This document shows, one piece after another, positions 5,663 to 19,771 of a stretch of DNA of 64,000 nt. The translations under genes and the position numbers were made by a program. Below the pieces are notes generated by a model. It was not told the origin of the DNA and did not search any database. It saw only the letters and a program-made list of their open reading frames with translations. The number at the start of each line of letters is the position of its first letter. The stretch's first letter is position 1. Location of the stretch: IMG/VR virus record IMGVR_UViG_3300032236_001613, positions 62,001-126,000 of that record. One strand, given 5' to 3'.

Positions 5663-5726
5663 TTTGTCAACTCCTCTGTCTGTGTGCGTGTATTATACGA
5701 AACACAGACAGAGTTGTCAACCATTT

Positions 5727-6011: not shown

Positions 6012-6067
6012 TGTCCGTGCTCCTTTTGTTAAGTGTATATTATACAATCAACTAGGTATTGAGTCAA

Positions 6068-6424: not shown

Positions 6425-6471
6425 CTCTATATACCTTTGATGATACAGTATACAGAGATTCTAACCTATTG

Positions 6472-6672
6472 TCAATCGGGTTTTTTGAGCCAAAACTCCG
6501 CATCGTGTGCTATGCATTCTAGTGTGCCTGCGCCCGGGTAGTGGCGTAGAATGTGCATAGCACGTTCGCGCAAGTGTCGAGGGACTCTGGGTGTGGCTTT
6601 TGGGTTTAAGAGTTCTACTAAGAAGCGTTCTGCTGCTAGTAGAGCGCGATATCGTTCATCGGGTAGGGTCAT
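6472..6672 (-). CDS. Small conserved phage protein (BPSL0761-like)
   Basis: MTLPDERYRAL...PRVPRHLRERA..ILRHYP pattern recalled from that family. Confidence 0.6.
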   Translation of the reverse strand: MTLPDERYRALLAAERFLVELLNPKATPRVPRHLRERAMHILRHYPGAGTLECIAHDAEFWLKKPD

Positions 6673-6675
6673 TTA

Positions 6676-7305: not shown

Positions 7306-7308
7306 TCT

Positions 7309-7491
7309 TCAGCCCAAATCCGTTTTATAGCGAATGTGTACAGCAAAATCATAGGCTGCTTCAGGAGTCAAGCCTTTGGCTACAGCCCACCCAAGAGTCA
7401 AACTAAACCAATCTTGTGAACTGTCTGTATCGATTTCTGATGCTCTATCAGAGCATTCGGTTTTGAACAGTTCGATCAATTGTTCGTTCAT
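7309..7491 (-). CDS. Hypothetical protein (MNE- start family)
   Basis: Stop/start overlap with neighbours. Confidence 0.7.
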   Translation of the reverse strand: MNEQLIELFKTECSDRASEIDTDSSQDWFSLTLGWAVAKGLTPEAAYDFAVHIRYKTDLG

Positions 7492-7697
7492 TATTCAACT
7501 CCGAAATGATGCTTCAAAATACTACCACGGCTAACAAATGGATGATCAGCATCCTTGTCCATAATATAAGCACATTCCTTGACAATCAACTGGGCGAAAT
7601 TTTTAATAAAAACTTCTTCCAAACTGTTGGCAAAATCAAATCCTGGCAGAGGTTTATATCCAGCCTGTTCAGCAAGTTCTCTAATTCGCTCGTTCAT
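7491..7697 (-). CDS. MNERI-family small protein
   Basis: MNERIRELAEQAG..FAQLIVKEC..KHHFGVE. Confidence 0.8.
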   Translation of the reverse strand: MNERIRELAEQAGYKPLPGFDFANSLEEVFIKNFAQLIVKECAYIMDKDADHPFVSRGSILKHHFGVE

Positions 7698-7975
7698 TCT
7701 TCAATTCCGAAATGTTTTAGGATCTCGTCTCGAAGTTCACCGTTGCGAAATTCGGTAGCAAAGTCGTCCACCAAATGCACATAAAGATACTGCATAGCCT
7801 GTTCGGATTTGGGCAGTTTCAGAAATTTCTTGATACGCCGCCGTTCTTCTTTACTATATTCCTTAAGGTGATCCTTATGCACATAAAAGCCATCTGGGTC
7901 GTAATAGTCAAATTCAAATTCCGTGGCAAGATTGTGACAGCGACTTTCCATGCTTTCAACAATATATTCGTTCAT
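7694..7975 (-). CDS. Small protein sharing MNE..HFG.E ends with its neighbours
   Basis: Starts MNEY, ends LKHFGIEE; ATGA overlaps. Confidence 0.75.
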   Translation of the reverse strand: MNEYIVESMESRCHNLATEFEFDYYDPDGFYVHKDHLKEYSKEERRRIKKFLKLPKSEQAMQYLYVHLVDDFATEFRNGELRDEILKHFGIEE

Positions 7976-8178
7976 TCTTTAACTCCAAAATAACGCTTCA
8001 AACGAACAGGATACTCACTTGCGGGAAAACGATGGTCGACAAAATCCTGTATAGTCTTAGCACATTCCATAACAATCAACTCTGCGAACTTTTCAATAGC
8101 CTCTTGATCCCAAGCATCAGGAGTACCGTCGCAATACAAACCTGCTTCCTCAGCGAGAGTGTGAATACGTTCGTTCAT
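7972..8178 (-). CDS. MNERI-family small protein
   Basis: MNERIHTLAEEAG..FAELIVMEC..RYFGVKE. Confidence 0.8.
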   Translation of the reverse strand: MNERIHTLAEEAGLYCDGTPDAWDQEAIEKFAELIVMECAKTIQDFVDHRFPASEYPVRLKRYFGVKE

Positions 8179-8390
8179 TATTCAAAGACCTTAACAACTT
8201 CTTTATGCACCCGCTTGTCTGTCTGTAGGTATTCAACCCAGTTTTCAGCATCTGCGAGGTCGTGAAATTTACCATCTCGCTTAGTAGGATGCCAGATGTT
8301 AATCCAAAACAAGCCTAAACACTTGCTCTGTATCGCATACTGTGGGCGTCCGTAGTAGGCGCCGCTATGCTTAACAATACGGTATTTCAT
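8178..8390 (-). CDS. Hypothetical protein
   Basis: MKYRIV..Y.IQ.K.L.FW pattern; coupled overlaps. Confidence 0.7.
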   Translation of the reverse strand: MKYRIVKHSGAYYGRPQYAIQSKCLGLFWINIWHPTKRDGKFHDLADAENWVEYLQTDKRVHKEVVKVFE

Positions 8391-8632
8391 GCTTCACCTT
8401 CTACTAATGACAAGTTGTATTCACGAATTATAGGCTTTTCATTATTGATAGAGCAAGGATCTTCCATCACGATAAGACGTGTGTCGTCGATAACATAGAT
8501 AACAGTTGGATCTTCTAGCCCTTCAAGAAAAACCCGATGCATCATAGCGTGTTTACTAACGCCCCACCAAGTAGGGTAATCGATCTTTTCCCAATCCAAC
8601 GAAAAAAGAAACAGGATAGGTGGTGCTTTCAT
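8387..8632 (-). CDS. Hypothetical protein
   Basis: ATGA overlaps on both sides. Confidence 0.65.
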   Translation of the reverse strand: MKAPPILFLFSLDWEKIDYPTWWGVSKHAMMHRVFLEGLEDPTVIYVIDDTRLIVMEDPCSINNEKPIIREYNLSLVEGEA

Positions 8633-8976
8633 TCTTCAAACCTTTTCCAAAATTGCTGGTATGCCTCGAACTCTTTAGAAAATGCAGCATCCTTAGCCTT
8701 TTTTTCTTTTGCCAATCGTGCCTTATTAGCCTTGTTTTCTTTCGCTACCCGTGCCTTATATTCGCGGTCATTTTCTTCGCGTCGTTCATAGACGTTGATT
8801 GTATACTGACCAGGAACCTCTTCTGTTTCTTCGTGACGGAAGAAAAGTTCTCGGTTCTTATGAGTCTCCATAAGATCCTGAAGATTCTGGATAACCTGCA
8901 TAGGAGTTTTATTATGAAAGGTATGATACACGTATGCGTTACGAACCCAGCTTTCAATAATTTTACGGTCACTCAC
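8629..8976 (-). CDS. Hypothetical protein
   Basis: First gene after promoter 9006-9033; GTG start with AGGAG RBS. Confidence 0.7.
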   Translation of the reverse strand: MSDRKIIESWVRNAYVYHTFHNKTPMQVIQNLQDLMETHKNRELFFRHEETEEVPGQYTINVYERREENDREYKARVAKENKANKARLAKEKKAKDAAFSKEFEAYQQFWKRFEE

Positions 8977-9029
8977 GGGTCTACTCCTTCTGTTTACATG
9001 CTAACAGTATAGCAGGTTTTACCAAAAAG

Positions 9030-9395
9030 TCAACCTGTAGGATTGTTGGATAGGCAATGCGGGCAGGGCATTACGTCTGTATTCGGCACCAAAATAATCC
9101 CAGCTCCGCCACATTCTGGGCAGGGATCTGAACCCCGCGCACGGATGGCTTTGAAAATTGCCATTTCGGCATCCCACACGGCAACCTCTTCAGCGTTTCC
9201 TTGGTTGCCGCAATCACAACGCTCGCAACTGCACGGACGCTTGTATTTAGGTTCGGCTAACTTCTCACACGCCTCGCGCTCATGGGCAGCGACAAGGTTG
9301 GCAAAGAGTTCAAAAGAGTCCCGTCCTTTAGACGAAAACATATAAAGATCAAACCCTGACTCTTCTACCAGTCTTAGGATGTCATCGCGGGTCAT
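9030..9395 (-). CDS. MTRDDI-type protein with Cys-rich zinc-binding motifs
   Basis: FANLVAAHEREAC motif; CSCERCDC, CPECGGAG, CPHC. Confidence 0.75.
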   Translation of the reverse strand: MTRDDILRLVEESGFDLYMFSSKGRDSFELFANLVAAHEREACEKLAEPKYKRPCSCERCDCGNQGNAEEVAVWDAEMAIFKAIRARGSDPCPECGGAGIILVPNTDVMPCPHCLSNNPTG

Positions 9396-9610
9396 CCGAA
9401 TGATCTCCTTGCATCATGTTCGTTGTCAAACATCTTGCAGCCCCAGTAAGTGAGAGCCTGTGCGTTGAAATAGCCAGGCTCACCCTTAGCCTTGTTCCAT
9501 GCTGCACAGGCTTCTGCAAAACTCTCTGCCTCGTACAGTCCACAAAATTCTGCACCGGAAGAATTACCCGTTGCAGCGTAACCTTCCATCCAGACTTCAT
9601 ATTGTTTCAT
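9392..9610 (-). CDS. Hypothetical protein
   Basis: YEVWMEGYAATG..YWGC pattern; overlap coupling. Confidence 0.7.
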   Translation of the reverse strand: MKQYEVWMEGYAATGNSSGAEFCGLYEAESFAEACAAWNKAKGEPGYFNAQALTYWGCKMFDNEHDARRSFG

Positions 9611-9622
9611 TGGTATCTACTT

Positions 9623-9796
9623 TTAAACGTAGCCCAACCACTGAGCTCCCCAACCTAGTGCACCGATTGCACACAATACGCTACCTAGGCCCAACAAAAT
9701 TCTAGCCCAGATGGGCAATATCTTGAATGCAATAGCTTCATAGCCCAAAGACACAAATAAGAACAAATAACAAATAGCTACAATTAACGGTTTCAT
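9623..9796 (-). CDS. Small membrane protein (57 aa)
   Basis: Manual translation MKPLIVAICYLFLFVSLGYEAIAFKILPIWARILLGLGSVLCAIGALGWGAQWLGYV; AGGAG RBS. Confidence 0.7.
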   Translation of the reverse strand: MKPLIVAICYLFLFVSLGYEAIAFKILPIWARILLGLGSVLCAIGALGWGAQWLGYV

Positions 9797-9839
9797 CTTT
9801 CTGCTCCTTTCAATGTAGAAGTATTATAGCAGATCGAGA

Positions 9840-10145
9840 TTAAGAGAACAACCTCTTATACCAGGGCTGTTCATCATTGACAACTTGTGGTTGTGTATTA
9901 AGAGTGGCGGCGTGCAACTCTCTATTTTGATAGCGCAACCCTTGATTCTCACGAGTGATGTCTAACAAATCATCTCGGCAAGATGCTAGGAGAGTTTCAA
10001 GCTCTTGGTTAAGAGCCTTCAAACGTTCGATAATAGTGCGTTGGCTAACGAACATGGCTTCGTAGTCAGCTAAACGCTGCTCTGCAGTAGGCTGTGTCTT
10101 TTCCAGCTCTTCTTTTTTACGCTGTTCGAATGTAGGTGCTGCCAT
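9840..10145 (-). CDS. Coiled-coil protein
   Basis: Heptads; C-terminus PWYKRLFS; AGGAG RBS. Confidence 0.75.
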   Translation of the reverse strand: MAAPTFEQRKKEELEKTQPTAEQRLADYEAMFVSQRTIIERLKALNQELETLLASCRDDLLDITRENQGLRYQNRELHAATLNTQPQVVNDEQPWYKRLFS

Positions 10146-10156
10146 TTCATGCTCCT

Positions 10157-10187
10157 AAAAAAAATGGGCAGTTTAATGACCTGCCCA
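10157..10187 (-). terminator. Rho-independent terminator
   Basis: TGGGCAG/CTGCCCA stem followed by an 8-T run on the minus strand. Confidence 0.8.
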
Positions 10188-10197
10188 GGTCGGTTAA

Positions 10198-10398
10198 TCA
10201 TCCGGCTACAGCATTGTTCCGGACAATCGACTCGGCTTCGTTACCATAAAGCCCATTAGCAGCCTTGATGGAGATCTGCTCACGCAAACCACCCGACTCA
10301 GTGCCGTTGCCCGAAAGCATACGAGCCACTGCATGGATGCTGTGGAAGCGACGGATAACGCCCGACGGATGGGTAACAAAAATTCGACGATTAGTCAT
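10198..10398 (-). CDS. Small putative DNA-binding protein; paralog of 1..132
   Basis: RRFHSIHAVARMLSGNGTESGGLR; AAGGAG RBS. Confidence 0.75.
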   Translation of the reverse strand: MTNRRIFVTHPSGVIRRFHSIHAVARMLSGNGTESGGLREQISIKAANGLYGNEAESIVRNNAVAG

Positions 10399-10477
10399 TT
10401 CAAACTCCTTGTGTATCTAAAAGGTTTAATCTAACTCAACAGAACTATTATAGCAAAACTCTCAATCTAAGTCAACC

Positions 10478-10759
10478 TCAAACCTTAATAACGCCATGGT
10501 TATAACGAGTCTCCAGTACATCGTAAAACTCGTCAACAGCAGCAAAAAACCGGCAATGACGCGGGCTAGCCAAACGTCCTGCAGCCTTAGCACGCCCATA
10601 GGCCCGATTGAAGTTATCGTGCTCGCTACAAATAGCAACCGCATAATCGATACCTTCGGGCTTTTCAATAAAGGCCACAGTGGCTCCACCACGGCTTTCA
10701 ATCTTTCCGTCCAGATCACGGTTACGATAGTGAATGTACTTGATCTTAGGTGTATTCAT
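10478..10759 (-). CDS. Conserved phage protein
   Basis: GGATVA..YAVAICSEHDNFNRAYGRAKA.GRL pattern; RBS and promoter. Confidence 0.75.
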   Translation of the reverse strand: MNTPKIKYIHYRNRDLDGKIESRGGATVAFIEKPEGIDYAVAICSEHDNFNRAYGRAKAAGRLASPRHCRFFAAVDEFYDVLETRYNHGVIKV

Positions 10760-10815
10760 CTGTCCATCTCCTTTCTGTTTGTGTCTAAGTATTATACTAT
10801 GGTTTTACCAAAAGG

Positions 10816-11355
10816 TCAAGTAATTTTTCTCGAAACAATAAAAGTATCATCTGCACAGTTATATAGCAATGATTCCTTAATTTGTTTCGATACGTTAAAA
10901 GTTTTCGGCATCTCGAACTCATCACTTCCTTGATTATTTTTAGCTCGTGCACCCGTATAACGAGTTTGAGATATTATATTCTTTAGATCATATCCTTTAG
11001 ACTTTGCATATTCTTTAATTTGTCGCTTTAACCACCTAATACCGGCGGTTCCTATGTCTACCCCATTATATTGAGTTCCTAAACTAGTATGAACAATTTT
11101 ATTGTTACTGGGATGGTCAACTGGTGCTATATTTCCAATGTCAATGGATCCATTTTTAGAAAGTGAGAATGACGCAATTACCAATGGTCTATTGCTAGAC
11201 TTTTCAATCACTTTGGCATAATAGTGCCCTGGTATATCCTTAACTTGTTCGAAAGTAATAGATAGCTCTTGTTCTGGATTCTTATACGATTCTAGTATCA
11301 ATATTGAATTAATGTTGATAAAAAAGAATTTGCTTTCTATTTCATGTAGTCTCAT
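10816..11355 (-). CDS. AT-rich late-type protein with capsid-targeting-like N-terminus
   Basis: MRLHEIE start; TAAATA box at 11374-11379; AT-rich. Confidence 0.7.
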   Translation of the reverse strand: MRLHEIESKFFFININSILILESYKNPEQELSITFEQVKDIPGHYYAKVIEKSSNRPLVIASFSLSKNGSIDIGNIAPVDHPSNNKIVHTSLGTQYNGVDIGTAGIRWLKRQIKEYAKSKGYDLKNIISQTRYTGARAKNNQGSDEFEMPKTFNVSKQIKESLLYNCADDTFIVSRKIT

Positions 11356-11384
11356 TCCTACGACCTTTTGCTATATTTAACTCC

Positions 11385-12029
11385 TTAGTGTGCATAGTAG
11401 CTAGTGTTCTGTACGCTGTCGTCCCAGCAGGCGCGGCAGTTACCGCACTCATTGTCTTGAAAGCGGCTAGGGCAATCGTAGCCGTGTGCAGCACCATTCT
11501 TATGCACGGTTGAGGTATGCTCAAAGCCCTTAGGCGGCTCTGCGTCCATTTGCTGGGCACTCATACGGATTACAAGATTGCGTGGACGGCTGCGAAGTCG
11601 AAGGAACTCGCGCACCATACCAAACTCACGGGTAGGCAACCAATGCTCAACCCAAGGAGTCTGCTCTGCTACTTCGGCAATCATCTGCAAGTGATCTACA
11701 CTCTGCAGGTCGCCGCTATCGTGCCAACGGAAGTGTGTTTCACCTTTCAGTAGGCGCACCATAGCAGCAATCCAAGTGTCGCGAGTAACAGTATTGAGCA
11801 GAGCTTCTGCCAAACGAGCATGACGACGGTTGTGTGCTGCCTTAGTGTTGGGTAGTGAATACATTCCGCGCATAGCGTAACACTGGTGGCAGGTGCTGCC
11901 TTCTACTTGGCGCAGGATGCTACCAGTTTGGCAACGGGTAGCACTAAGCCCAAAGCTCTTGCCCGGCATTTTGCTAGGATTGCTGAGTCCACCAACAAAC
12001 TCTGCTGCCTCTGCTTTGGTCCTAAACAT
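11385..12029 (-). CDS. Gp88-like phage protein (Cys-rich)
   Basis: LSNPSKMPG.SF.L.A..C..G..L, C..CYA, FRWHDSGDL, HWLPTRE, C..C..CW; start moved to ATG 12029. Confidence 0.75.
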   Translation of the reverse strand: MFRTKAEAAEFVGGLSNPSKMPGKSFGLSATRCQTGSILRQVEGSTCHQCYAMRGMYSLPNTKAAHNRRHARLAEALLNTVTRDTWIAAMVRLLKGETHFRWHDSGDLQSVDHLQMIAEVAEQTPWVEHWLPTREFGMVREFLRLRSRPRNLVIRMSAQQMDAEPPKGFEHTSTVHKNGAAHGYDCPSRFQDNECGNCRACWDDSVQNTSYYAH

Positions 12030-12083
12030 AGCCAACTCCTTACTGTTACTGTAGGAATAGTATACTATGGTTTTACCAAAAGG

Positions 12084-12527
12084 TCAAGCCAATTCTTTCT
12101 TCTTGGCTCGGACTCGGGCTGTTCCCTTCTTAGTATGACGCACCATGCGAGCGTAACGATGCTGCCCCATCAAGATTTGGATACGACCTTCAAACCCGTC
12201 CTTAATAGGAACGCTCCCAGTTTCAATTTTGAAGTTGTTCTTGTCAAACCACTGAAGCCACTCGTAAAGTTCGGCTTCGGCTTCCTCACCGCGGCTCAAT
12301 ACTGCCACGCAGGGATGCTTATGATAGGCGTTCTCCGGACACCAAACGACGCCATTCTTATCTGCTCGTTTGTAGTCCTCGTCGTACCATGCATAGTCTG
12401 GATAATTACCGTCGACTACAATGCCCACGCAATGCCGCCCGATGCCTACTTCGCCTTCGAGATCCAGTTGACAGTTATTCTTAGCAGCCCAAACCGCCAT
12501 CCAAGTAATCTTTTCATCGCGTGTCAT
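12084..12527 (-). CDS. Hypothetical protein
   Basis: Own promoter and AGGAG RBS. Confidence 0.75.
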   Translation of the reverse strand: MTRDEKITWMAVWAAKNNCQLDLEGEVGIGRHCVGIVVDGNYPDYAWYDEDYKRADKNGVVWCPENAYHKHPCVAVLSRGEEAEAELYEWLQWFDKNNFKIETGSVPIKDGFEGRIQILMGQHRYARMVRHTKKGTARVRAKKKELA

Positions 12528-12581
12528 TGTATTACTCCTTGCTCTAACTATGAGTATATTATAACAGGTTTTACCAAATGG

Positions 12582-12923
12582 TCAAACACAATCTGAGACA
12601 AATTCTGTGTCAGGTGCAACCAGCGTTTCTACAAACCAAGTACCGCCTGTGCCCTGAGTATGCTCTTGTGCGTAGTCTTCTGCAGACTCTACGCTAGGAA
12701 ACGGGCCCGCAAAGTTAAATCCCTTGACAGGATCTCCATGTACTACAACAAGATCCACATTATCATCTTGTCCATCAACATTGGGCGTCCGCATCATGAC
12801 TACAAACCATGCAGCGGCTGTGCAGTACTCCCCGCCATAGTCGTAGGCTGCTTCTTCTTGATCAAAAGGCCCGATAAACTCGAAGCCGCTAGAAAGGTCA
12901 CCAAATAATATAACAAACTGCAT
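12582..12923 (-). CDS. Protein with internal duplication
   Basis: Two copies of V...GD...GF.F.GPF...E.A.DY..E...  WFV. Confidence 0.8.
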   Translation of the reverse strand: MQFVILFGDLSSGFEFIGPFDQEEAAYDYGGEYCTAAAWFVVMMRTPNVDGQDDNVDLVVVHGDPVKGFNFAGPFPSVESAEDYAQEHTQGTGGTWFVETLVAPDTEFVSDCV

Positions 12924-12987
12924 AGACAGTCTCCTTTTGCTATGAGTATATTATAACAGGTTTTACCAAAAAGTCAAGACCTGTGTT

Positions 12988-13353
12988 CTAAAGAGTCAAA
13001 CCTTCGACACCATTTTTCCGAGGTTGCCAGATACACTGGCTCCACTGAACTAGTTCTCGGTCATTCCTGTCATCGTAGGGTTCTAACCATGCCACAGGCA
13101 CCGCGTAAGACATAGGCCTGCCACTATGAGTGGAAGTTCCCCGATCAATCTGCCTACCGTCGGCCAGCACAGCAGTGAGGTCGTGCACGTCACAGGTGAT
13201 GCGTTGCCCGCCTGTTGTCTCTACAGTGGCGTGCCTGGCAGGTGCTCGCACCACAGCGTATTGCAGTTCATCGGGCGGTGGCGTGCCCTGCTGGTCAATC
13301 TGAATCACACGGACCCGTTGTCCAACTTTAAATCCCGTACTCATATTAAACAT
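12988..13353 (-). CDS. Hypothetical protein (FKVGQRV / WSQCIWQP)
   Basis: Own promoter and RBS; motifs shared with 2459..3001. Confidence 0.7.
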   Translation of the reverse strand: MFNMSTGFKVGQRVRVIQIDQQGTPPPDELQYAVVRAPARHATVETTGGQRITCDVHDLTAVLADGRQIDRGTSTHSGRPMSYAVPVAWLEPYDDRNDRELVQWSQCIWQPRKNGVEGLTL

Positions 13354-13405
13354 TTTCTCCTTGCTAGTGTCTGTGTATTATAGCAGGTTTTACCAAGAAG
13401 TCAAG

Positions 13406-13640
13406 TGCTTCTCTCTGCTGGCGGTGTTTGTCATCTCACCACAAACAATTATGTGGTATCCGCATCCCAACACAGAGAGACTTTCGTGTGCCAACGCCCG
13501 TTAGGTTAGACGGCAGTATTGCTACTGGAGACCATTGACAGTCATTCTCGCGAATGATATGTTGTTCTCAAACCACCCGTGGTTGTCACACCACTTCATC
13601 ATGCGGGTCACATTAGTGGCTGACTAAGCCACGTGGTCTT
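13406..13640 (-). ncRNA. Candidate multi-hairpin structured ncRNA
   Basis: ORF-free; GNRA-capped stems TCATTC-GCGA-GAATGA and CAGTA-GCAA-TACTG; 8-bp TCTCTCTG/CAGAGAGA enclosing a 7-bp stem. Confidence 0.6.
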
Positions 13641-13643
13641 TAA

Positions 13644-13928
13644 TTAACTAAAAATGTCAGCCAAAATCTGGTCAATTTCATGCTGACGTGCACGTTCGCC
13701 ATGAACGCGATCCATGAACTCTGACATCATGCCCGGACGATTGTGGACATAGTCCAGCTGGCCGTATGCCGAAATGTCAAAGTAACGGAAGGATGGTGCA
13801 CCAGGATAGTACTTAATCCACTGACCGCGCTGCAGGACCAAACGACCGTCCTGGATAGCACGCCGAGTGGCCGGATCCGAAAGAACCGGAGTAGGAAGAA
13901 ACTGACGACCCTTACGATTGATAACCAT
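13644..13928 (-). CDS. Hypothetical protein
   Basis: Promoter 13978-14006 and AAGGAG RBS. Confidence 0.7.
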   Translation of the reverse strand: MVINRKGRQFLPTPVLSDPATRRAIQDGRLVLQRGQWIKYYPGAPSFRYFDISAYGQLDYVHNRPGMMSEFMDRVHGERARQHEIDQILADIFS

Positions 13929-14002
13929 ATTAATTGCTCCTTACAAAAAAGTGTTTAAACTCTAACTCAACAGAACTATTATACTAAACTTTTACCAAAA
14001 GG

Positions 14003-14164
14003 TCAATAAAGACTTGAAAGATTTTCACGTTGCCAAACCCAGAGATCCTGTATCACATGAAACGCAGGTCCAACAGGGCCAATAGCGACGCCAGTGCGGC
14101 TATCCACTTCAAAAGTCTGCCAACCGCCTACAACACTACGGCAAGTGTATTCTTTGACAAACAT
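14003..14164 (-). CDS. Small hypothetical protein (53 aa)
   Basis: Manual translation MFVKEYTCRSVVGGWQTFEVDSRTG...; AAGGAG RBS. Confidence 0.65.
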   Translation of the reverse strand: MFVKEYTCRSVVGGWQTFEVDSRTGVAIGPVGPAFHVIQDLWVWQRENLSSLY

Positions 14165-14173
14165 GTCTGCTCC

Positions 14174-14326
14174 TTAGAGTTTGATCAGCACATCAGGATA
14201 GGCAGTAGCAAATGTTCGTGTTCGTTCACCACGCGGATCATAGTAATAATCCACTCGTTGACAATAGCGTTTGGCCAGCCACTTCACCACGAACACAGGC
14301 AGTATCACAGTCCATTTTGCTAACAT
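14174..14326 (-). CDS. Small hypothetical protein (50 aa)
   Basis: Manual translation MLAKWTVILPVFVVKWLAKRYC...; AAGGAG RBS, promoter 14353-14380. Confidence 0.65.
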   Translation of the reverse strand: MLAKWTVILPVFVVKWLAKRYCQRVDYYYDPRGERTRTFATAYPDVLIKL

Positions 14327-14376
14327 TGTTTGCTCCTTACTAGTATCTATATAGTATAGCAGGTTTTACCAAAAGG

Positions 14377-14595
14377 TCAACCAACCAAACCCTCATCCAT
14401 CATCTCCAAGAGTTTGATGGTGTATTCTCGCTCGTGACTGTAAGTCCTTGACTCGTTAGCCCATTCCTCACCATAGACAGCGAGGAACTCGTTGTAGATC
14501 TCTCGAAGAGAGATTTGAGGAAAACGGAATGCAACCTCATGGTACAGTTGGCCTTGGTTGACCATCTCGCGCATCTCGATGTTGATCTCTTTCAT
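14377..14595 (-). CDS. Hypothetical protein
   Basis: Own promoter 14620-14647. Confidence 0.7.
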   Translation of the reverse strand: MKEINIEMREMVNQGQLYHEVAFRFPQISLREIYNEFLAVYGEEWANESRTYSHEREYTIKLLEMMDEGLVG

Positions 14596-14649
14596 CTTAC
14601 CCTCGTTTGCTATGAATATATTATAGCAGGTTTTACCAAAAGGTCAAAC

Positions 14650-14844
14650 TTAGAATTGGCGAACGCAGAGTGACTGAATATGCGGAGCAGGCGCATAAAA
14701 ACTATTTTGTTCCTGCTGATGCAGCCATCCAGTACCTGCAGCTAGACAGGCCTCTTTGCTTTCAAAAGGCCCAATCTGGGTTATAGCTGAGCCGCCGCGA
14801 TGGTCACTCGCCGCAATAGTAAGAATCAATAACCAACCTGCCAT
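14650..14844 (-). CDS. Small exported/membrane protein
   Basis: WLLIL..., F.SKEAC..A pattern; GGAG RBS. Confidence 0.7.
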   Translation of the reverse strand: MAGWLLILTIAASDHRGGSAITQIGPFESKEACLAAGTGWLHQQEQNSFYAPAPHIQSLCVRQF

Positions 14845-14845
14845 A

Positions 14846-15046
14846 TTATTTCTCCTTCTTCAATTTAGGAAAGTGATAGGCTAAATTTTCCCAGAGACCT
14901 AGAACTATTGCTGCGGGTATAAACAGCACCATTAGACGGCTCCTGTCTAGGCCTAGCCCTAGTAATGGCATAGTCGTTAGTATCACAATACCTGCTATGA
15001 TCAGAGCCACAACTACGCTCAGTAAAATGACCAATAGAGTCACCAT
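14846..15046 (-). CDS. Small two-TM membrane protein
   Basis: Hydrophobic; 1-nt spacing with neighbours. Confidence 0.7.
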   Translation of the reverse strand: MVTLLVILLSVVVALIIAGIVILTTMPLLGLGLDRSRLMVLFIPAAIVLGLWENLAYHFPKLKKEK

Positions 15047-15047
15047 A

Positions 15048-15251
15048 TTACTTGTCCTTCTTGAAAAGATCCACTACAGACATCAAAATGCTCTTCAGTA
15101 AGAACACTACAAAGCCTACAACCGCGTATGGCAGACAGATGATAAAGCCTATAACAGGCACAGCCATCACAGCAGCTCCTAATGAGAACACGGCAGCGAA
15201 TGCTACTATGCACCATAAAATCAACAGAGTTGAGTAACTAACGGTAATCAT
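15048..15251 (-). CDS. Small two-TM membrane protein
   Basis: Hydrophobic; 1-nt spacing. Confidence 0.7.
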   Translation of the reverse strand: MITVSYSTLLILWCIVAFAAVFSLGAAVMAVPVIGFIICLPYAVVGFVVFLLKSILMSVVDLFKKDK

Positions 15252-15252
15252 A

Positions 15253-15471
15253 TCACTTGACCTTTTTTGGAAAAATCTTTTTCCAAAGCATAATGGGTGA
15301 TGTGATCAGTAACACGCCCAGCATCAATATACCACCCGGAATTAGAATAATCCACAGTATGGGCCTCTGCTTGGTGCCGAAATGTGCGCCAAACTTCATA
15401 GAAACCATGCCGGCTATTCCCAATGCCAAAAACAATACAACCAGCAAGGTTATGAGACTGATAGTAATCAT
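15253..15471 (-). CDS. Small two-TM membrane protein
   Basis: Hydrophobic; AAGGAG RBS. Confidence 0.7.
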   Translation of the reverse strand: MITISLITLLVVLFLALGIAGMVSMKFGAHFGTKQRPILWIILIPGGILMLGVLLITSPIMLWKKIFPKKVK

Positions 15472-15480
15472 AACATCTCC

Positions 15481-15774
15481 TTAAAACGGAATATCGTCGT
15501 CAAGCTGACGAGTAGATGGCCGAGGAGGACCTACGAACTCACTCTTAGCAACAGCCCGATCAACCCAGTATTGTACCTCCTCTTCGGTCATATAACAGGT
15601 TTCTTCAGGATGTGGCTGCGGCTTACCACGATAGTGCGGGTTCTCAATCCACACGTCGTAATCAGTAAGAATCCATTGACTATCCTTGTAACGATCATAA
15701 TCACCTACATTGTAGGCATATTCACGCATGGCTTCAGCTGGAGTGGCTACGCGATCTTCTTCATCATAAAACAT
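15481..15774 (-). CDS. Protein ending in SSB-tail-like DDDIPF
   Basis: C-terminus LDDDIPF; own promoter and RBS. Confidence 0.8.
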   Translation of the reverse strand: MFYDEEDRVATPAEAMREYAYNVGDYDRYKDSQWILTDYDVWIENPHYRGKPQPHPEETCYMTEEEVQYWVDRAVAKSEFVGPPRPSTRQLDDDIPF

Positions 15775-15828
15775 TGAAGACTCCTTACTGTTACTGTAGG
15801 AATAGTATACTACGGTTTTACCAAAAGG

Positions 15829-16095
15829 TCAAGATTTTTTGTATAGAGAGTGAAGGGCTTCGTGCTGCTCCAAAGCTTTCAACTGCTTCTTCACCTGAGT
15901 GAGATAGAGGTAGCGGCGATTGACTTCGGATCGGGCCAACTCACCATCGCAGGTCAAGTTCTCAGGGCTAAGGTCAGACTCTAGATGACCTGCCAGATGC
16001 CGACGGTGTTGCGGATCGTTGAGGTCCAGATCGGCCTCCTTGAAGAAGCGATTGATCTGATTGATGTGATCTAGATATTCAGTGAGTTCTTCCAT
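15829..16095 (-). CDS. Conserved phage protein
   Basis: LSPENLTCDGEL motif; own promoter and RBS. Confidence 0.75.
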   Translation of the reverse strand: MEELTEYLDHINQINRFFKEADLDLNDPQHRRHLAGHLESDLSPENLTCDGELARSEVNRRYLYLTQVKKQLKALEQHEALHSLYKKS

Positions 16096-16152
16096 AGGTT
16101 GCTCCTTGCTAGTGAGTCAGTATTATACTAAGGTTTTACCAAAAGGTCAACA

Positions 16153-16359
16153 TCAATTCACAAGATTTACACGCTCTAAACGGTAAAAGAAATCTTGCTT
16201 AGGGTCAACAATTCCAAACTCCACAAAGTATTCCGAACCTGTAAGTTCGTCATGGCAATGGAACCCGTCATCTTGTGTGTAGTCAATACGAAACACATCA
16301 CCATTCTGTATAAAGAATACTGAGTTCTGTGCAATGTCATGCAATTCGTTATGGTCCAT
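16153..16359 (-). CDS. Hypothetical protein
   Basis: Stop/start overlap. Confidence 0.7.
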   Translation of the reverse strand: MDHNELHDIAQNSVFFIQNGDVFRIDYTQDDGFHCHDELTGSEYFVEFGIVDPKQDFFYRLERVNLVN

Positions 16360-16691
16360 TATGCCTTCTCCTCAGTTTGAGCTTTGAGCTTGGCTAACTT
16401 TTTTTCGAGATTACTGATTTCTTTCAAGCGGGCCTTTTCCTTTCGGATAGCCTCTTTCTTCTTTTCTTCCTCTTCTCGAATTTTACGTTCAGCATCCTGC
16501 TTCTGATGTTCATTCCACCAGTCCAGATGCTGTTTCTTAGTAACTCCGCACTCTGTCCAATCAATGCGATCCACAATAGTAGGATCTGCTCGCATAGCAG
16601 CACAAACTACGGCTTCGAACTGTTTGACACGTTTCTCAAGGTTTCGTGAATTACGTTCTCGATCATAACTATCATCTACATAGCAAGGCAT
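16359..16691 (-). CDS. Hypothetical protein with charged coiled coil
   Basis: MPC start, WW.EH..QD motif; AAGGAG RBS. Confidence 0.75.
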   Translation of the reverse strand: MPCYVDDSYDRERNSRNLEKRVKQFEAVVCAAMRADPTIVDRIDWTECGVTKKQHLDWWNEHQKQDAERKIREEEEKKKEAIRKEKARLKEISNLEKKLAKLKAQTEEKA

Positions 16692-16703
16692 ATCATATTC
16701 TCC

Positions 16704-17057
16704 TTAGTCTGAACTGTCGTAGGCGTTGATCTGACCGCAATGGATACACTTATACTGGTCATAGCCGCGGCCTAGATTCTGTAAGAACTTCCACTCATGC
16801 CCAGAACACTTAGCCGCAGTCTCCTTAGAGACATAACCGTGACCACCACAGTGATCACAGATTTTACGGAAATGACTGTAACGATGACGATTCTCTGGAG
16901 TATCAGGCTTGCCATGCAGGTTGTAGCTGTTGATAGAAAGATTCCACCCACCATGACCACGGCAGCGAGGACACTCTACAGTATAATTAAGCCAAGGCTC
17001 CTTGCGTGGATGATCCAAGAATGCATCTGGATGATCTGGCGTAAGAAAGTCTGACAT
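16704..17057 (-). CDS. Zinc-finger protein (DnaJ-type CxxCxGxG)
   Basis: CPRCRGHG, CDHCGGHG, CIHCG. Confidence 0.8.
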   Translation of the reverse strand: MSDFLTPDHPDAFLDHPRKEPWLNYTVECPRCRGHGGWNLSINSYNLHGKPDTPENRHRYSHFRKICDHCGGHGYVSKETAAKCSGHEWKFLQNLGRGYDQYKCIHCGQINAYDSSD

Positions 17058-17110
17058 ATGTTACTCCTTGCTCTAACTATGAAACTATTATAGCAGGTTT
17101 TACCAAAAGG

Positions 17111-17257
17111 TCAACCGTTATCTGGAACTTCCTTGAAGCCAAATGCCGTAAGGTCATCAAGGTTAATGACTTCCCGGAGATAGTTCAGTAGCATCAGCTC
17201 GGCTGCATCGAGATCTTCTGCATCAAACTCTGTTTCGAAATTGATTTTGAATTTCAT
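17111..17257 (-). CDS. Small acidic protein (48 aa)
   Basis: Manual translation MKFKINFETEFDAEDLDAAELMLLNYLREVINLDDL...; stop lies in the next -35 box. Confidence 0.55.
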   Translation of the reverse strand: MKFKINFETEFDAEDLDAAELMLLNYLREVINLDDLTAFGFKEVPDNG

Positions 17258-17462
17258 AGGCTTCCTCACGGCTCATTTCATTATTGATACGATTGAAAAT
17301 GCAGTAGTCAGACACTCCTGCATCATACCCGGTCTTATAAGCATGACCACATTTGGCGTCGTGCCCGTTAACGGCATCGTAATACTGCTGATCTACACGA
17401 CCTTCTTCACGCCCGTCGAAGTAACCACGAGCATAGGCATAATAGGTGCTATCGTAAGACAT
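17223..17462 (-). CDS. Hypothetical protein
   Basis: YARGYFDGR..YKTGYDAG repeat-like motif; AAGGAG RBS. Confidence 0.7.
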   Translation of the reverse strand: MSYDSTYYAYARGYFDGREEGRVDQQYYDAVNGHDAKCGHAYKTGYDAGVSDYCIFNRINNEMSREEAYEIQNQFRNRV

Positions 17463-17480
17463 TGTGTTGCTCCTTTAATC

Positions 17481-17690
17481 TTATACCAATTTCATATAGT
17501 TAAATTCGGTCTTATTGCAGCGGCTGCAGATTCTGGTTTGATATATCACAAAACTGTAGACTCGACCCTTTCTATGCCAGGTTTCATTAAGAGACATGTT
17601 TGTCTCTTCATGATCCTCTCCATTGAGAAACTCACGAACGTAGTATTCGTTTAGATTAGCCCACTGACTCCACTTGTGTATAATGCACAT
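17481..17690 (-). CDS. Hypothetical protein
   Basis: MCIIHKWSQW..RICSRCNK pattern. Confidence 0.65.
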   Translation of the reverse strand: MCIIHKWSQWANLNEYYVREFLNGEDHEETNMSLNETWHRKGRVYSFVIYQTRICSRCNKTEFNYMKLV

Positions 17691-17747
17691 ATTACTTCAG
17701 CTCCTTGCTCTAACTGTGAATACATTATAGCAGGTTTTACCAAAAAG

Positions 17748-17990
17748 TCAACCTTCTTCGTCTTCTTCCTCGTCGTCTTCGGGCCAATCGTCGTCCTCAT
17801 CGTCTTCCCATTCTCCGTTACAATCTTCTCCCCAGGGTTCGTCGATGACGAGATCTAGGTTCTCGTCAAAAACTTCTTGGTTGACAATGGATACGTTGAC
17901 ATGGTTGTGTTCATAGTTTGCCAAAGCTTCAACATCAGTTTCTGCTTCAACTTCATACTGATGGGTGATTCGAACGTAGAATTTGGGCAT
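17748..17990 (-). CDS. Acidic hypothetical protein
   Basis: Own promoter and RBS; poly-D/E tail. Confidence 0.75.
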   Translation of the reverse strand: MPKFYVRITHQYEVEAETDVEALANYEHNHVNVSIVNQEVFDENLDLVIDEPWGEDCNGEWEDDEDDDWPEDDEEEDEEG

Positions 17991-18041
17991 CTCAATCTCC
18001 TTGTTATTGAAATAGAATTATACTAAGGTTTTACCAAAAGG

Positions 18042-18227
18042 TCAACCAGCTGGCGTTATATTCACAACAGTGAATAGTCCTCCCGGATAGGCTTCGAGAG
18101 CAACTGAAGGAAATAAATCAACGGCAGCATTTAGATCCGCTGCTTCAATCGTTAGACTTTCTAGTCTCCCAGGGTGAGGGAACTCAGGAGGATCTGATAC
18201 TTGAAAAGTTATAGTCCATAGACTCAT
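18042..18227 (-). CDS. Hypothetical protein
   Basis: GGAG RBS, overlap. Confidence 0.6.
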   Translation of the reverse strand: MSLWTITFQVSDPPEFPHPGRLESLTIEAADLNAAVDLFPSVALEAYPGGLFTVVNITPAG

Positions 18228-18460
18228 ATTACTACTCCATGTTCTTTATTGGATAGAATTACTTTTAATGCAATAGAATACGCTTCTTCAGCATCTTCAC
18301 AATTAAACAATTCAGGAAAACTACCCCGATCTAGATAGACATTGCAGATGTACTGGCCAAACCGCCAGTCCCGCTCATCACGACCACGACGATAGTGTGC
18401 GATCCAATAACGGCGCTCGAGGTTCAATAGGTGAACGGTAAGTGTGCGAGAAAACTGCAT
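18224..18460 (-). CDS. Hypothetical protein
   Basis: R.GQ...N.Y.....PELF..ED pattern. Confidence 0.65.
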   Translation of the reverse strand: MQFSRTLTVHLLNLERRYWIAHYRRGRDERDWRFGQYICNVYLDRGSFPELFNCEDAEEAYSIALKVILSNKEHGVVI

Positions 18461-18521
18461 AGATAATATTTACCATGTTTATCAGCCAATATTATAGCAG
18501 CTACTGCCAAACGATCAATAT

Positions 18522-18899
18522 TTACTTACTAGATGTCTGGACGAAGTGAGCTTGAGACCTATAGCCTAGTTCGCGTAGGCTAGTATTAATCAACTGCATG
18601 ACCGTCTTAGAAACGGGCGTGTCTGTTCTTGGAGGTTGAATACTCCAGGGCATTCCTCGCTCTTTGGGTTTCAAAAATGGATATCGATACTTCTCACCAT
18701 TAGGGTAACGAAACTCTTGCCCAGTTTTTTTGAGCAAGGTATTGTAAAGCCAATAAAGCATGTTGCTACGCTGACGTGCACGATCGTAGATATCTTTAGA
18801 AGATTGATCAATCTGTTCGATACCCCGACGCAAGGCACTGAGAGCTAATGCTTGAAGCTCGGGGTCTGGGTTACTTTCTAACAGTTCTTGTATCTGCAT
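18522..18899 (-). CDS. Late protein with capsid-targeting-like N-terminus
   Basis: MQIQELLE; TAAATA 4 nt upstream of ATG. Confidence 0.75.
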   Translation of the reverse strand: MQIQELLESNPDPELQALALSALRRGIEQIDQSSKDIYDRARQRSNMLYWLYNTLLKKTGQEFRYPNGEKYRYPFLKPKERGMPWSIQPPRTDTPVSKTVMQLINTSLRELGYRSQAHFVQTSSK

Positions 18900-18919
18900 A
18901 CTGTATTTATTTGTAGAAA

Positions 18920-19225
18920 GTTGCAGCGTCTTCGCTGGGTACGAAACGCTGCTGCCTCTTGATTTTTTGGAGATAAATCCTTCCAGCCCCGCTGAATCGG
19001 GCTCAAGTTATCCTACTTGTGCGACAAACAATAGAAACTTTCGTTTCTACCCGGCAAAGCCCTCATCATAACGACAATGACTCTACCCGCGGTTATACCG
19101 TTTCATTAGTCCCCTAGGAGCATAGCTAGCATTCAGACCGCTAGACGACACTAAGGGTTTCGCTTTCGGTTCAGGCATATGTAGTTATCAACATCACAGA
19201 CCGCTACAGCGGGGTTTTTGGTTTA
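18920..19225 (-). ncRNA. Candidate ~300-nt structured ncRNA downstream of tRNA-Leu
   Basis: ORF-free; long-range CCCCGCTG/CAGCGGGG, TAGAAAC-GAAA-GTTTCTA hairpin, GCAGCGT/ACGCTGC stem. Confidence 0.55.
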
Positions 19226-19230
19226 ATAGT

Positions 19231-19519
19231 TGGTGCCCTGAGCCGGACTCGAACCGGCACGCCAGTGGCGTCAGATTTTCTTACTACTACAGTTTTCACT
19301 GCCAGCTTGCGCTGTTTGTAGTCTGGACTATACCTTGACCTTAGCTATTGCTTTAGGTCCTTGCCGTCTAGTCTCTACACCTTCCTATTTCTAGGCTTGG
19401 CTCGGTATTAGCAGTTAAGCCTTCACCGAATTTGACAAGTTACATCTTAAAAGTTTCCTAATAAGAGCTCAAATCTTTTCTCTAAGTCTGATGCGTCTAC
19501 CTTGTTCCGCCATCAGGGC
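19231..19519 (-). tRNA. tRNA-Leu(UAA) split by a group I intron (exons 19484-19519 and 19231-19279)
   Basis: Acceptor GCCCTGA/TCAGGGC, anticodon stem TCAGA/TCTGA, loop CT-T^AA-AA after splicing, long variable arm, CCA. Confidence 0.92.
19280..19483 (-). mobile_element. Group I self-splicing intron (IC3-type, 204 nt, no ORF)
   Basis: P AAATTCGGTGAA, Q AATACCGAGC, R GTAGAGACTAGACGG, S AAGGTATAGTCC; follows a U and ends in G; inserted after U34. Confidence 0.9.
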
Positions 19520-19572
19520 AAATTATCAACTAACTATCTATTTAATATACGCTAATTATCTTCAGTTGTCAA

Positions 19573-19715
19573 ATGAGTTTTAGCCTCAGTTTACTATTCT
19601 CTTGCTACCTGATGTAAGTGCTTACAACACTTTTTACTAGTATCACAGGCTACCCGCTTCGAACAAGGTTAGGCTTGTACTTGTACTTGACCCGACGAGC
19701 TGGGCTAAAACTCAT
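19573..19715 (-). ncRNA. Candidate 143-nt rod-shaped ncRNA with its own promoter
   Basis: Perfect 13-bp terminal inverted repeat ATGAGTTTTAGCC; predicted +1 lies 7 nt after TATAAT of TTGACC-17-TATAAT. Confidence 0.6.
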
Positions 19716-19771
19716 AAAACTATTATATGCTAGCACCAGCATAAGGTCAACAATTAACAATAAATACTCCT

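What the first reader, a model, noticed from the sequence alone, without database searches (positions are those of the whole stretch)
19231..19519. Phage tRNA-Leu(UAA) carrying a cyanobacterial/plastid-type group I intron
Seen: a 204-nt intron inserted after U34 with intact P/Q/R/S elements and terminal G, and no homing ORF. Known: this position and IC3 class typify the tRNA-Leu(UAA) intron of cyanobacteria and plastids. Inference: splicing gates supply of a TTA-decoding tRNA for the AT-rich late genes, and the intact anticodon does not exist until splicing, which may shield it from anticodon nucleases.
Basis: partly seen in the sequence, partly recalled or inferred. Interest (0 to 1): 0.6.

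Follow-up and report, generated by a model that had tools for sequence, protein, structure and literature searches.

The report
Jumbo-phage tRNA-Leu gene with self-splicing intron
A 328-kb freshwater jumbo phage carries its only UUA-reading leucine tRNA gene split by a compact, intact group I ribozyme intron; the intron belongs to a phage-borne, apparently mobile lineage that is common in viral metagenomes but that I could not find described in the literature I could search.

Summary
On the minus strand at 19519-19231 lies a tRNA-Leu(UAA) gene: 5' exon 19519-19484, 204-nt group I intron 19483-19280 inserted between U34 and A35, 3' exon 19279-19231 with CCA encoded. The intron passes Rfam's threshold. 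It has a full P1-P9 fold with strong covariation, an invariant U.G at the 5' splice site, a terminal G and no ORF.

The insertion site is the classical 'Leu.3Ug' site, but that site occurs in many bacterial phyla, not only cyanobacteria. The window's intron sits in an almost purely viral clade. Its nearest relatives include the unannotated copy in Agrobacterium phage Atu_ph07 and one in a 735-kb megaphage. Nothing marks the phage as a cyanophage: it has no psbA and its terminase is RaK2/PA5oct-like.

Demand for the tRNA is real. TTA makes up 46% of the phage's Leu codons. The gene heads a promoter-dense early block that avoids TTA, so the tRNA is probably made early. 'Gating' by splicing and shielding from anticodon nucleases have no support.

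One new result: in phages the intron is more conserved than the exons, near-identical introns sit in very different tRNA(UAA) bodies, and one intron-plus/intron-minus allele pair exists. This points to horizontal spread.

The parts
19722..19750 (-). Upstream sigma70-like promoter (TTGACC-17-TATAAT, 11/12)
   Evidence: This is a consensus match only. It is one of 22 minus-strand sites scoring 11-12/12 in window 1-20000.
19544..19572 (-). Proximal sigma70-like promoter (TTGACA-17-TATATT, 11/12). Its -10 element ends 25 nt before the tRNA 5' end, which predicts a leader of about 18 nt.
   Evidence: sequence
19484..19519 (-). 5' exon of tRNA-Leu(UAA): acceptor 5' strand, D arm, anticodon stem 5' strand, C32 U33 U34
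19280..19483 (-). Group I intron, 204 nt, IC3-like, no ORF; omega-G at 19280
19467..19487 (-). P1 with internal guide sequence. Exon CUU plus intron AGA pairs with UUUGAG. The U.G wobble at the 5' splice site is U 19484 with G 19470.
   Evidence: U.G, C-G and U-A invariant in 31/31 sequences
19446..19465 (-). P2 hairpin with GAAA tetraloop (two U.U mismatches in this copy)
   Evidence: (all 8 pairs covary)
19325..19439 (-). Catalytic core. P3 (19439-19434 / 19365-19360), P4 (19430-19425 / 19406-19401), P5 (19421-19419 / 19412-19410), P6 with GAAA loop (19395-19384), P7 (19375-19369 / 19330-19325, pseudoknotted with P3), P8 (19358-19338)
   Evidence: P3, P6, P7 and P8 all show compensatory changes; P4 and P7 are nearly invariant.
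19283..19322 (-). P9 three-way domain: P9 (19322-19318 / 19287-19283), P9a with GCAA loop (19314-19303), P9b with GAAA loop (19301-19290)
19231..19279 (-). 3' exon: A35 A36 A37 A38, anticodon stem 3' strand, long variable arm, T arm, acceptor 3' strand, discriminator A, encoded CCA
1..19600 (-). Context: a presumed early block of small minus-strand ORFs, headed by the tRNA-Leu gene and ending near tRNA-Lys(UUU) at 240-314. It is dense in sigma70-type promoters, has GC3 0.46, and uses TTA for only 11% of Leu codons.

Best explanation
This is a working, intron-split tRNA-Leu(UAA) gene of an uncultured freshwater jumbo phage. Host RNA polymerase probably transcribes it from sigma70-type promoters at the head of the phage's early region (inferred). 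The 204-nt intron folds into a complete, compact IC3-type group I ribozyme and removes itself by the usual two GTP-initiated transesterifications. The anticodon stem of the tRNA holds the exons together (mechanism inferred from the family; the fold is shown here). RNase P trimming then yields a class II tRNA-Leu with anticodon UAA and an encoded CCA end. The tRNA serves the phage's own codon usage: TTA is its commonest Leu codon everywhere except in the early block, and this is the phage's only UUA/UUG reader. The intron itself is most likely a tolerated selfish passenger rather than a regulator. It belongs to a lineage of short, ORF-less introns that lives mainly in phage tRNA genes and has moved between different phage tRNA(UAA) genes.
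For: Gene and intron boundaries. Fold: a P1-P9 model with 93.7% of cells paired against 28-41% in slid controls, 28 pairs with compensatory change, covariation score 0.35 against 0.03-0.08, and U.G at the splice site in 31/31 sequences. The MFE fold independently recovers P2-P6, P8 and P9 (z -2.65). No ORF in the intron. It is the only tRNA-Leu(UAA) among 28 tRNAs. TTA is 46% of Leu codons genome-wide but 10.9% in genome 60-80 kb, where GC3 is 0.46 against about 0.24 elsewhere. Promoters: 70 sites against 35.4+-6.2 expected in window 1-20000, with 22 of the 23 best on the minus strand, two of them directly upstream of the tRNA; the control region shows no enrichment. Lineage: the window sits in an all-viral 15-row set (SH-aLRT 95) inside a clade of 44 viral and 5 bacterial rows. 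Its nearest introns are viral, at 80-85% identity. The same interrupted gene occurs in Atu_ph07 and megaphage LR756501. At least 46, and probably about 62, of 120 viral contigs fetched by the core motif carry it. Freshwater relatives about 94% identical keep the intron. Mobility: intron identity exceeds exon identity in 81% of 1035 viral pairs against 11% of 1225 bacterial pairs. 14 viral pairs have introns 93-97.5% identical in tRNA bodies only 54-74% identical. An intron-minus allele with an identical 5' half exists in EBPR podovirus 3.
Against: No RNA data exist for this phage, so splicing, the mature tRNA and the timing of expression are all inferred. Promoter matches are consensus scans, and the host is unknown. 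The window's copy has an A.C mismatch at the outer P1 pair and two U.U mismatches in P2; both are peripheral, but they could slow splicing. Higher intron than exon conservation could partly reflect ribozyme constraint plus fast tRNA-body adaptation to hosts, rather than transfer.
Confidence: 0.78

Rival explanations
1. Regulatory gate. Splicing rate, set by GTP, Mg2+, temperature or a phage/host factor, deliberately times or throttles supply of the UUA-reading tRNA, so that TTA-rich middle and late genes are translated only when the cell is in the right state.
For: There is a sharp split in TTA use between the early block (11% of Leu codons) and the rest of the genome (about 50%). The gene is placed at the very start of the early block. 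The intron is strongly conserved across very different phages.
Against: Nothing here measures rate or regulation. The related IC3 tRNA introns are known as efficient self-splicers (established knowledge, e.g. works cited in PMC3984707). Intron-minus alleles of near-identical phage tRNA-Leu genes exist, so the intron is dispensable for at least some phages. Conservation is explained by ribozyme constraint and recent spread.
Confidence: 0.1
2. Defence evasion. The intron protects the gene or its precursor, either from anticodon nucleases or, at the DNA level, from homing or other endonucleases of competing phages that cut uninterrupted tRNA anticodon-loop sequence.
For: [quoted passage not shown] Intron-plus and intron-minus alleles coexist among phages. 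An HNH/EndoVII-like ORF lies 3 kb away at 22468-23130.
Against: After splicing, the mature tRNA has a normal anticodon loop and is as exposed to an RNA nuclease as any other. I found no anticodon nuclease directed at tRNA-Leu(UAA) in the papers I read, and I did not search for one specifically. No endonuclease gene is linked to the intron here, and the HNH ORF is not adjacent.
Confidence: 0.07
3. A dead relic. The intron no longer splices, the gene is a pseudogene, and UUA decoding relies on the host.
For: There is no expression evidence. The window's copy has an A.C at the outer P1 pair and two U.U mismatches in P2.
Against: Every core helix is intact. The U.G wobble, omega-G and P7 are conserved. 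The exons form a complete cloverleaf with encoded CCA. Relatives at about 94% identity keep the whole gene. The phage uses TTA at 36.8 per 1000 codons and has no other UUA reader.
Confidence: 0.05

Closest known systems
[quoted passage not shown]
   Same: Identical insertion site (CUU|...G|AAAA, between U34 and A35). The same helices, including the P9/P9a/P9b three-way domain. No ORF. Alignable at 66-76% identity.
   Different: The window's intron is shorter (204 nt against a median of 260 in the 8 cyanobacterial examples). It falls in a viral clade, not the cyanobacterial one, though the AU test does not formally exclude the latter (p 0.099). It is carried by a phage whose terminase resembles those of jumbo phages of Gammaproteobacteria, and the phage has no psbA.
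tRNA-Leu(UAA) introns of non-cyanobacterial bacteria (Alphaproteobacteria, Burkholderiaceae, Acidobacteriota and others; census in Williams 2020, 10.1101/2020.01.27.920355)
   Same: Same site and same core motif.
   Different: They form a separate clade of 34 rows (SH-aLRT 95) and are longer (median 236 nt). In bacteria the exons are more conserved than the introns; in phages it is the reverse.
Unannotated interrupted tRNA-Leu(UAA) of Agrobacterium phage Atu_ph07 (MF403008.1, about 112886-113247) and of megaphage LR756501
   Same: The same gene, site and intron lineage, in jumbo or mega phages. The Atu_ph07 intron shares 85% of the window intron's positions.
   Different: The Atu_ph07 intron is 278 nt, with extensions in P5 and P8. 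The megaphage tRNA does not encode CCA. The Atu_ph07 record annotates a 'hypothetical protein' CDS over the 3' part of the gene.
Classical phage group I introns (T4 td/nrdB/nrdD, SPO1 DNA polymerase, S-PM2 psbA, Twort)
   Same: Self-splicing group I ribozymes in phage genomes.
   Different: Those interrupt protein-coding genes and often carry homing endonuclease genes. The 2014 review states that all phage introns then known were in protein genes, despite many phage tRNA genes (PMC3984707). This one interrupts a tRNA and has no ORF.

Membership tests
Group I intron (Rfam RF00028) | Covariance-model score above the curated threshold | tested here: met
   64.3 bits against gathering 50, full model 1-253 (repeated)
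Group I intron (Rfam RF00028) | U.G wobble at the 5' splice site within P1, and a terminal (omega) G | tested here: met
   U 19484 pairs with G 19470; omega-G is at 19280. U.G is present in 31/31 aligned relatives. 96 of 101 tRNA-Leu(UAA) genes have CTT|...G|AAAA.
Group I intron (Rfam RF00028) | P3-P7 pseudoknot with P4-P6 and P3-P8 domains supported by covariation | tested here: met
   59 pairs, 93.7% of cells paired, 28 pairs with changes on both sides, against slid controls at 28-41%
Group I intron (Rfam RF00028) | Guanosine-dependent self-splicing | not testable with these tools
   No RNA runs hold the phage. This needs an in-vitro assay.
Bacterial tRNA anticodon-loop introns, type Leu.3Ug (subgroup IC3) | Insertion between U34 and A35 of tRNA-Leu(UAA) | tested here: met
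Bacterial tRNA anticodon-loop introns, type Leu.3Ug (subgroup IC3) | Compact core without a P5abc extension, and sequence homology to known members | tested here: met
   P5 is a 3-bp hairpin. The intron aligns with cyanobacterial and other bacterial members, and 217 columns could be used for a tree. The IC3 label itself is taken from the literature; I did not compute a subgroup classification.
Cyanobacterial/plastid clade of the tRNA-Leu intron | Groups phylogenetically with cyanobacterial introns | tested here: inconclusive
   The best tree puts it in a viral clade. Holding it with 8 cyanobacterial rows costs 55.7 lnL units, but AU p is 0.099.
Mobile group I intron with homing endonuclease | An endonuclease ORF inside the intron | tested here: not met
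   The longest stop-free stretch is 37 aa
Functional class II tRNA-Leu | Cloverleaf with long variable arm, discriminator A73, anticodon UAA after splicing | tested here: met
   ARAGORN call with intron. The acceptor, anticodon stem (UCAGA/UCUGA), variable arm, T arm, A73 and CCA are read directly.
Cyanophage | Photosystem gene psbA, or closest relatives among cyanophages | tested here: not met
   No PF00124 match in the 328-kb genome. The best TerL matches are RaK2-like and PA5oct-like phages.

The most novel reading that the evidence does not exclude
Phages maintain their own lineage of miniature, ORF-less group I introns. These hop between tRNA anticodon loops of unrelated phages: tRNA(UAA) genes of both class II and class I shape, and apparently also Lys(UUU), Arg(UCU), Met(CAU) and Thr(UGU). 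They would move by a route that needs no intron-encoded endonuclease, such as reverse splicing into the CUU^AAAA loop or trans-acting free-standing nucleases. Their presence may influence competition between co-infecting phages or the timing of tRNA supply.
Probability: 0.3. Interest if true: 0.65.

Novelty: new member of a known kind. Interest (0 to 1): 0.45.

Why it matters
The tRNA-Leu(UAA) intron is a textbook 'ancient cyanobacterial/plastid' intron, and reviews state that phage introns sit in protein genes. Three results here change that picture. The same intron type is common in phage tRNA genes. It is missed by default tRNA finders and by the annotation of cultured phages such as Atu_ph07. 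In phages it behaves like a recently spreading element rather than a vertically inherited relic. This affects phage annotation, because tRNA counts and codon-supply analyses are underestimates and spurious CDSs are called over exons. It complicates use of this intron as a cyanobacterial or plastid marker in environmental DNA. It also offers a tractable system (Atu_ph07 on Agrobacterium tumefaciens C58) for asking how ORF-less group I introns move.

Tried and rejected
- Default ARAGORN and the Rfam tRNA model do not see the gene; ARAGORN needs its intron option.
- No RNA-seq run holds the phage, so splicing could not be observed. Contigs from DNA runs only showed that relatives at about 94% identity keep the intron, and that one relative has other sequence in place of 18474-19535.
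- Host inference failed. DNA ligase hits are only 30-34% identical and come from mixed phages. TerL points only loosely to jumbo phages of Gammaproteobacteria. psbA is absent.
- The AU test of 'window + cyanobacteria' as one clade was not significant (p 0.099), so I do not claim that this grouping is excluded.
- The ORF-free 331 nt downstream of the tRNA (18900-19230) has no Rfam hit, no phage blastn match and only modest fold stability, z -1.98. I do not call it an RNA gene.
- The two adjacent 391-aa ORFs are not paralogues.
- Ten literature searches found no description of group I introns in phage tRNA genes. The nearest item is an uncharacterised 'tRNA-Stop interrupted by ~2.5 kb' in Vibrio phage pVa5. 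Subscription journals are not covered by the library, so absence of a report is not proven.
- They were printed once inside a script, and all exon comparisons were made half by half.

Full report
WHAT IS THERE. The window is bases 62001-126000 of a 328,068-bp IMG/VR virus record, CheckV 92% complete. Read on the minus strand, 19519-19231 is a tRNA-Leu(UAA) gene in three parts. The 36-nt 5' exon (19519-19484) ends in GACUU, so its last base is U34. The 204-nt intron (19483-19280) ends in G. The 49-nt 3' exon (19279-19231) begins AAAAUCUGA and carries the long variable arm, T arm, discriminator A and an encoded CCA. Rfam's group I intron model scores 64.3 bits against a gathering score of 50, over the whole model. 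The intron has no reading frame longer than 37 codons.

STRUCTURE. I derived P1-P9 by hand from the sequence and the Rfam alignment.
- P1: exon CUU plus intron AGA pairs with UUUGAG, with the U.G wobble at the splice site.
- P2: hairpin with a GAAA loop.
- P3: CUUGUC/GGCAAG.
- P4: UUCGGU/ACCGAG.
- P5: a 3-bp hairpin, so there is no P5abc extension.
- P6: hairpin with a GAAA loop.
- P7: pseudoknotted with P3.
- P8: present.
- P9: a three-way domain, with a GCAA loop on P9a and a GAAA loop on P9b.
On an alignment of 31 non-identical members of the viral clade (A1), 93.7% of cells form standard pairs, against 28-41% when the 3' partners are slid by 1-3 columns. 28 of 59 pairs show changes on both sides. 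The covariation score is 0.35 against 0.03-0.08 in the slid controls. The C-G, U-A and U.G pairs at the splice site are invariant. The model was derived from one of the aligned sequences, which favours it on 'cells paired', but the compensatory changes are independent of that. A plain MFE fold recovers P2-P6, P8, P9, P9a and P9b (-57.3 kcal/mol, z -2.65). The window's copy has an A.C at the outermost P1 pair and two U.U mismatches inside P2; both are peripheral.

RELATIVES, AND IS IT 'CYANOBACTERIAL-TYPE'? A blastn of the locus against GenBank phages found the same interrupted gene, unannotated, in Agrobacterium phage Atu_ph07 (490 kb) and in a 735-kb uncultured megaphage. I then scanned for a 21-base pattern with 19 fixed bases, covering the P7/P3' core and kept degenerate enough to fit the Anabaena-type intron as I recalled it. 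In 46 viral and 52 bacterial loci, ARAGORN places the motif inside a tRNA-Leu(UAA) split after U34. A further 16 viral calls labelled 'Tyr(ata)', 'Ser(aga)' or 'Ser(tga)' are the same gene with the splice site set 1-2 nt off. The bacterial holders include cyanobacteria (8). They also include Caulobacteraceae, Rhizobiaceae, Sphingomonadales, Burkholderia/Paraburkholderia, Acidobacteriota, Vulcanimicrobiota (Eremiobacterota), Chloroflexia, Bacteroidia and Gammaproteobacteria. This agrees with Williams' 2020 census of 5,292 bacterial tRNA introns, in which Leu.3Ug is one of four classical types, all filed as IC3.

A maximum-likelihood tree of 96 introns with canonical junctions separates three groups: a cyanobacterial clade (8 cyanobacteria plus one unnamed bacterium, SH-aLRT 100), a proteobacterial/acidobacterial clade (34 rows, 95), and a clade of 44 of the 45 viral introns plus 5 Vulcanimicrobiota/Acidoferrum rows on a long branch. 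The window lies in an all-viral set of 15 (SH-aLRT 95). By pairwise identity its 25 nearest introns are all viral (80-85%), and cyanobacterial ones reach 66-76%. Viral introns are also the shortest, with a median of 202 nt against 236 in other bacteria and 260 in cyanobacteria. Forcing the window's intron together with the cyanobacterial ones costs 55.7 log-likelihood units, but the AU test gives p = 0.099. The label 'cyanobacterial-type' is therefore disfavoured, not excluded.

The phage itself gives no sign of being a cyanophage. It has no psbA. Its large terminase is closest (42-52% aa identity) to the RaK2-like and PA5oct-like jumbo phages of Klebsiella, Escherichia and Pseudomonas. Its DNA occurs in freshwater metagenomes. 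The host remains unknown.

WHAT THE tRNA IS FOR. The genome encodes 28 tRNAs. 25 are in a cluster at 194-204 kb. Three are scattered in the window: Lys(UUU), this Leu(UAA), and Met(CAU). The only other Leu tRNA is UAG. I took 370 greedily chosen long ORFs covering 90.5% of the genome. In these, TTA is the commonest Leu codon (46% of Leu, 36.8 per 1000 codons) and the genome GC is 37.2%. One region stands out. In genome 60-80 kb (window 1-18000), 38 of the 48 chosen ORFs lie on the minus strand, and the region as a whole uses TTA for only 10.9% of Leu codons with GC3 0.46, against about 0.24 elsewhere. That same block carries 70 sigma70-type promoter matches against 35.4+-6.2 in shuffles, and 22 of the 23 matches at 11-12/12 are on the minus strand. 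A neighbouring 20 kb shows no excess (56 against 61.6+-9.8, none at 12/12). The tRNA-Leu gene is the first gene of this block, directly behind two of these promoters: TTGACC-17-TATAAT at 19750-19722 and TTGACA-17-TATATT at 19572-19544. My reading is inference, not demonstration. The block looks like an early region read by host polymerase and written in host-like codons. The UUA-reading tRNA would be made from the outset, ahead of the TTA-rich bulk of the genome.

THE INTRON AS A MOBILE PASSENGER. I compared the gene halves separately. The window's intron is more like other viral introns (median 79% identity) than its exons are like their exons (69% for the 5' exon, 67% for the 3' exon). Against bacterial genes the order is reversed (exons 72%, intron 64%). 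Over all pairs, intron identity exceeds exon identity in 81% of 1,035 viral pairs but in only 11% of 1,225 bacterial pairs. 14 viral pairs have introns 93-97.5% identical inside tRNA bodies that are only 54-74% identical. Some of these pair a class II body (long variable arm) with a class-I-shaped body. EBPR podovirus 3 carries an annotated, uninterrupted trnL(TAA). Its 5' half is 35/35 identical to the 5' exon of an intron-bearing viral contig (L036). Its anticodon stem and acceptor arm also match, while the variable and T arms differ. Together these results point to gain, loss and transfer of the intron among phage tRNA genes without an intron-encoded endonuclease. How it moves is not shown. 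Candidates are reverse splicing into the conserved CUU^AAAA loop, recombination through the short conserved flanks, and trans-acting free-standing nucleases. Ribozyme constraint combined with fast host-adaptation of tRNA bodies could explain part of the pattern, but it does not easily explain near-identical introns in dissimilar bodies.

Shielding from anticodon nucleases would apply only to the precursor, because the spliced tRNA has an ordinary loop. I found nothing for it. A DNA-level variant, in which the intron disrupts a nuclease target, is conceivable, since an endonuclease specific for tRNA-fMet anticodon regions is on record (reference list of PMC3984707). It is untested here.

NOVELTY. 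The intron type and its chemistry are classical. [quoted passage not shown] Ten full-text searches found no later description of group I introns in phage tRNA genes. The library lacks most subscription journals, so this is not proof of absence. I therefore file the finding as a new member of a known kind. The wider result is that there is a phage-borne, apparently mobile lineage, which is unannotated even in cultured phages.

LIMITS. There is no expression or splicing data. The host is unknown. Promoters are consensus matches. ORFs for codon counts were chosen by a simple greedy rule, not a gene finder. The collections were sampled with one exact core motif and both scans were capped, so the frequencies are not a census. 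The tree rests on 217 columns.

Noticed in passing
window 1-19600, minus strand: A block of about 38 small minus-strand ORFs with 22 near-consensus sigma70 promoters (11-12/12), GC3 0.46 against about 0.24 elsewhere, and TTA at only 11% of Leu codons. It looks like a host-RNAP early region written in host-like codons, bounded by tRNA-Leu(UAA) at its head and tRNA-Lys(UUU) (240-314) at its tail.
   Followed up: partly
viral loci L014, L088, L093, L095, L099 and others (16 of 45 viral tRNA(UAA) genes): The same intron sits in tRNAs with anticodon UAA that lack the long variable arm (3' exon about 40 nt, class-I shape, discriminator A). Which amino acid they carry is unknown. If it is not leucine, UUA/UUG would be recoded in those phages.
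   Followed up: no
L002 1494-1855 (Agrobacterium phage Atu_ph07, MF403008.1 about 112886-113247): The interrupted tRNA-Leu(UAA) is not annotated in the record. A 'hypothetical protein' CDS (AUZ94936.1) is drawn over its 3' part and is probably spurious.
   Followed up: partly
L086 3211-3522 (90,490-bp contig, the same length and position as the Gordonia phage Daredevil blastn hit at 41897-41970); L042, L114, L043, L066, L054, L097, L107, L061, L118: The same intron core interrupts other phage tRNAs: Lys(UUU), Arg(UCU), Met(CAU) and Thr(UGU). One apparent case is in a cultured actinophage where nothing is annotated at that place.
   Followed up: partly
L247 701-782 (EBPR podovirus 3, JF412296.1) against L036 13114-13409: The uninterrupted and interrupted versions of a tRNA-Leu(UAA) share a 35/35-identical 5' half but have diverged 3' halves. 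The asymmetry might be a recombination or co-conversion tract.
   Followed up: partly
window 18900-19230: A 331-nt ORF-free spacer lies between the tRNA and the first early ORF. It contains several strong hairpins, two of them followed by T-runs on the plus strand. It has no Rfam hit and no phage blastn match; fold z is -1.98. Its function is unknown.
   Followed up: partly
window 22468-23130 (+), next to tRNA-Met(CAU) at 22131-22208 (-): A free-standing HNH/endonuclease VII-like ORF (PHROG 1035/3322/3118) lies about 3 kb from the interrupted tRNA. I did not examine a possible link to tRNA-gene or intron mobility.
   Followed up: no
window 18474-19535, seen in run X2 (record 9): A related freshwater phage contig has 2,081 other bases in place of these 1,060 bases, which include the tRNA-Leu gene. 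Another contig in the same run keeps the intron-bearing gene at about 94% identity. The locus is therefore variable among relatives.
   Followed up: no
window 33057-36236 and 46101-63050 (+): A collagen-repeat tail-fibre protein (1059 aa) and three giant ORFs (1807, 2445 and 1361 aa) follow downstream. They are presumably virion or tail components.
   Followed up: no
Pelagibacter phage HTVC120P 19653-19807; Bacillus phage Tavor_SA 9221-9328; Alteromonas phages AD45-P1 to P4 at about 42.4 kb: The same intron core (74-87% identity over 50-160 nt) appears inside or beside capsid and tape-measure genes, or in unannotated spots, of small cultured phages. This suggests related introns in protein genes.
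   Followed up: no
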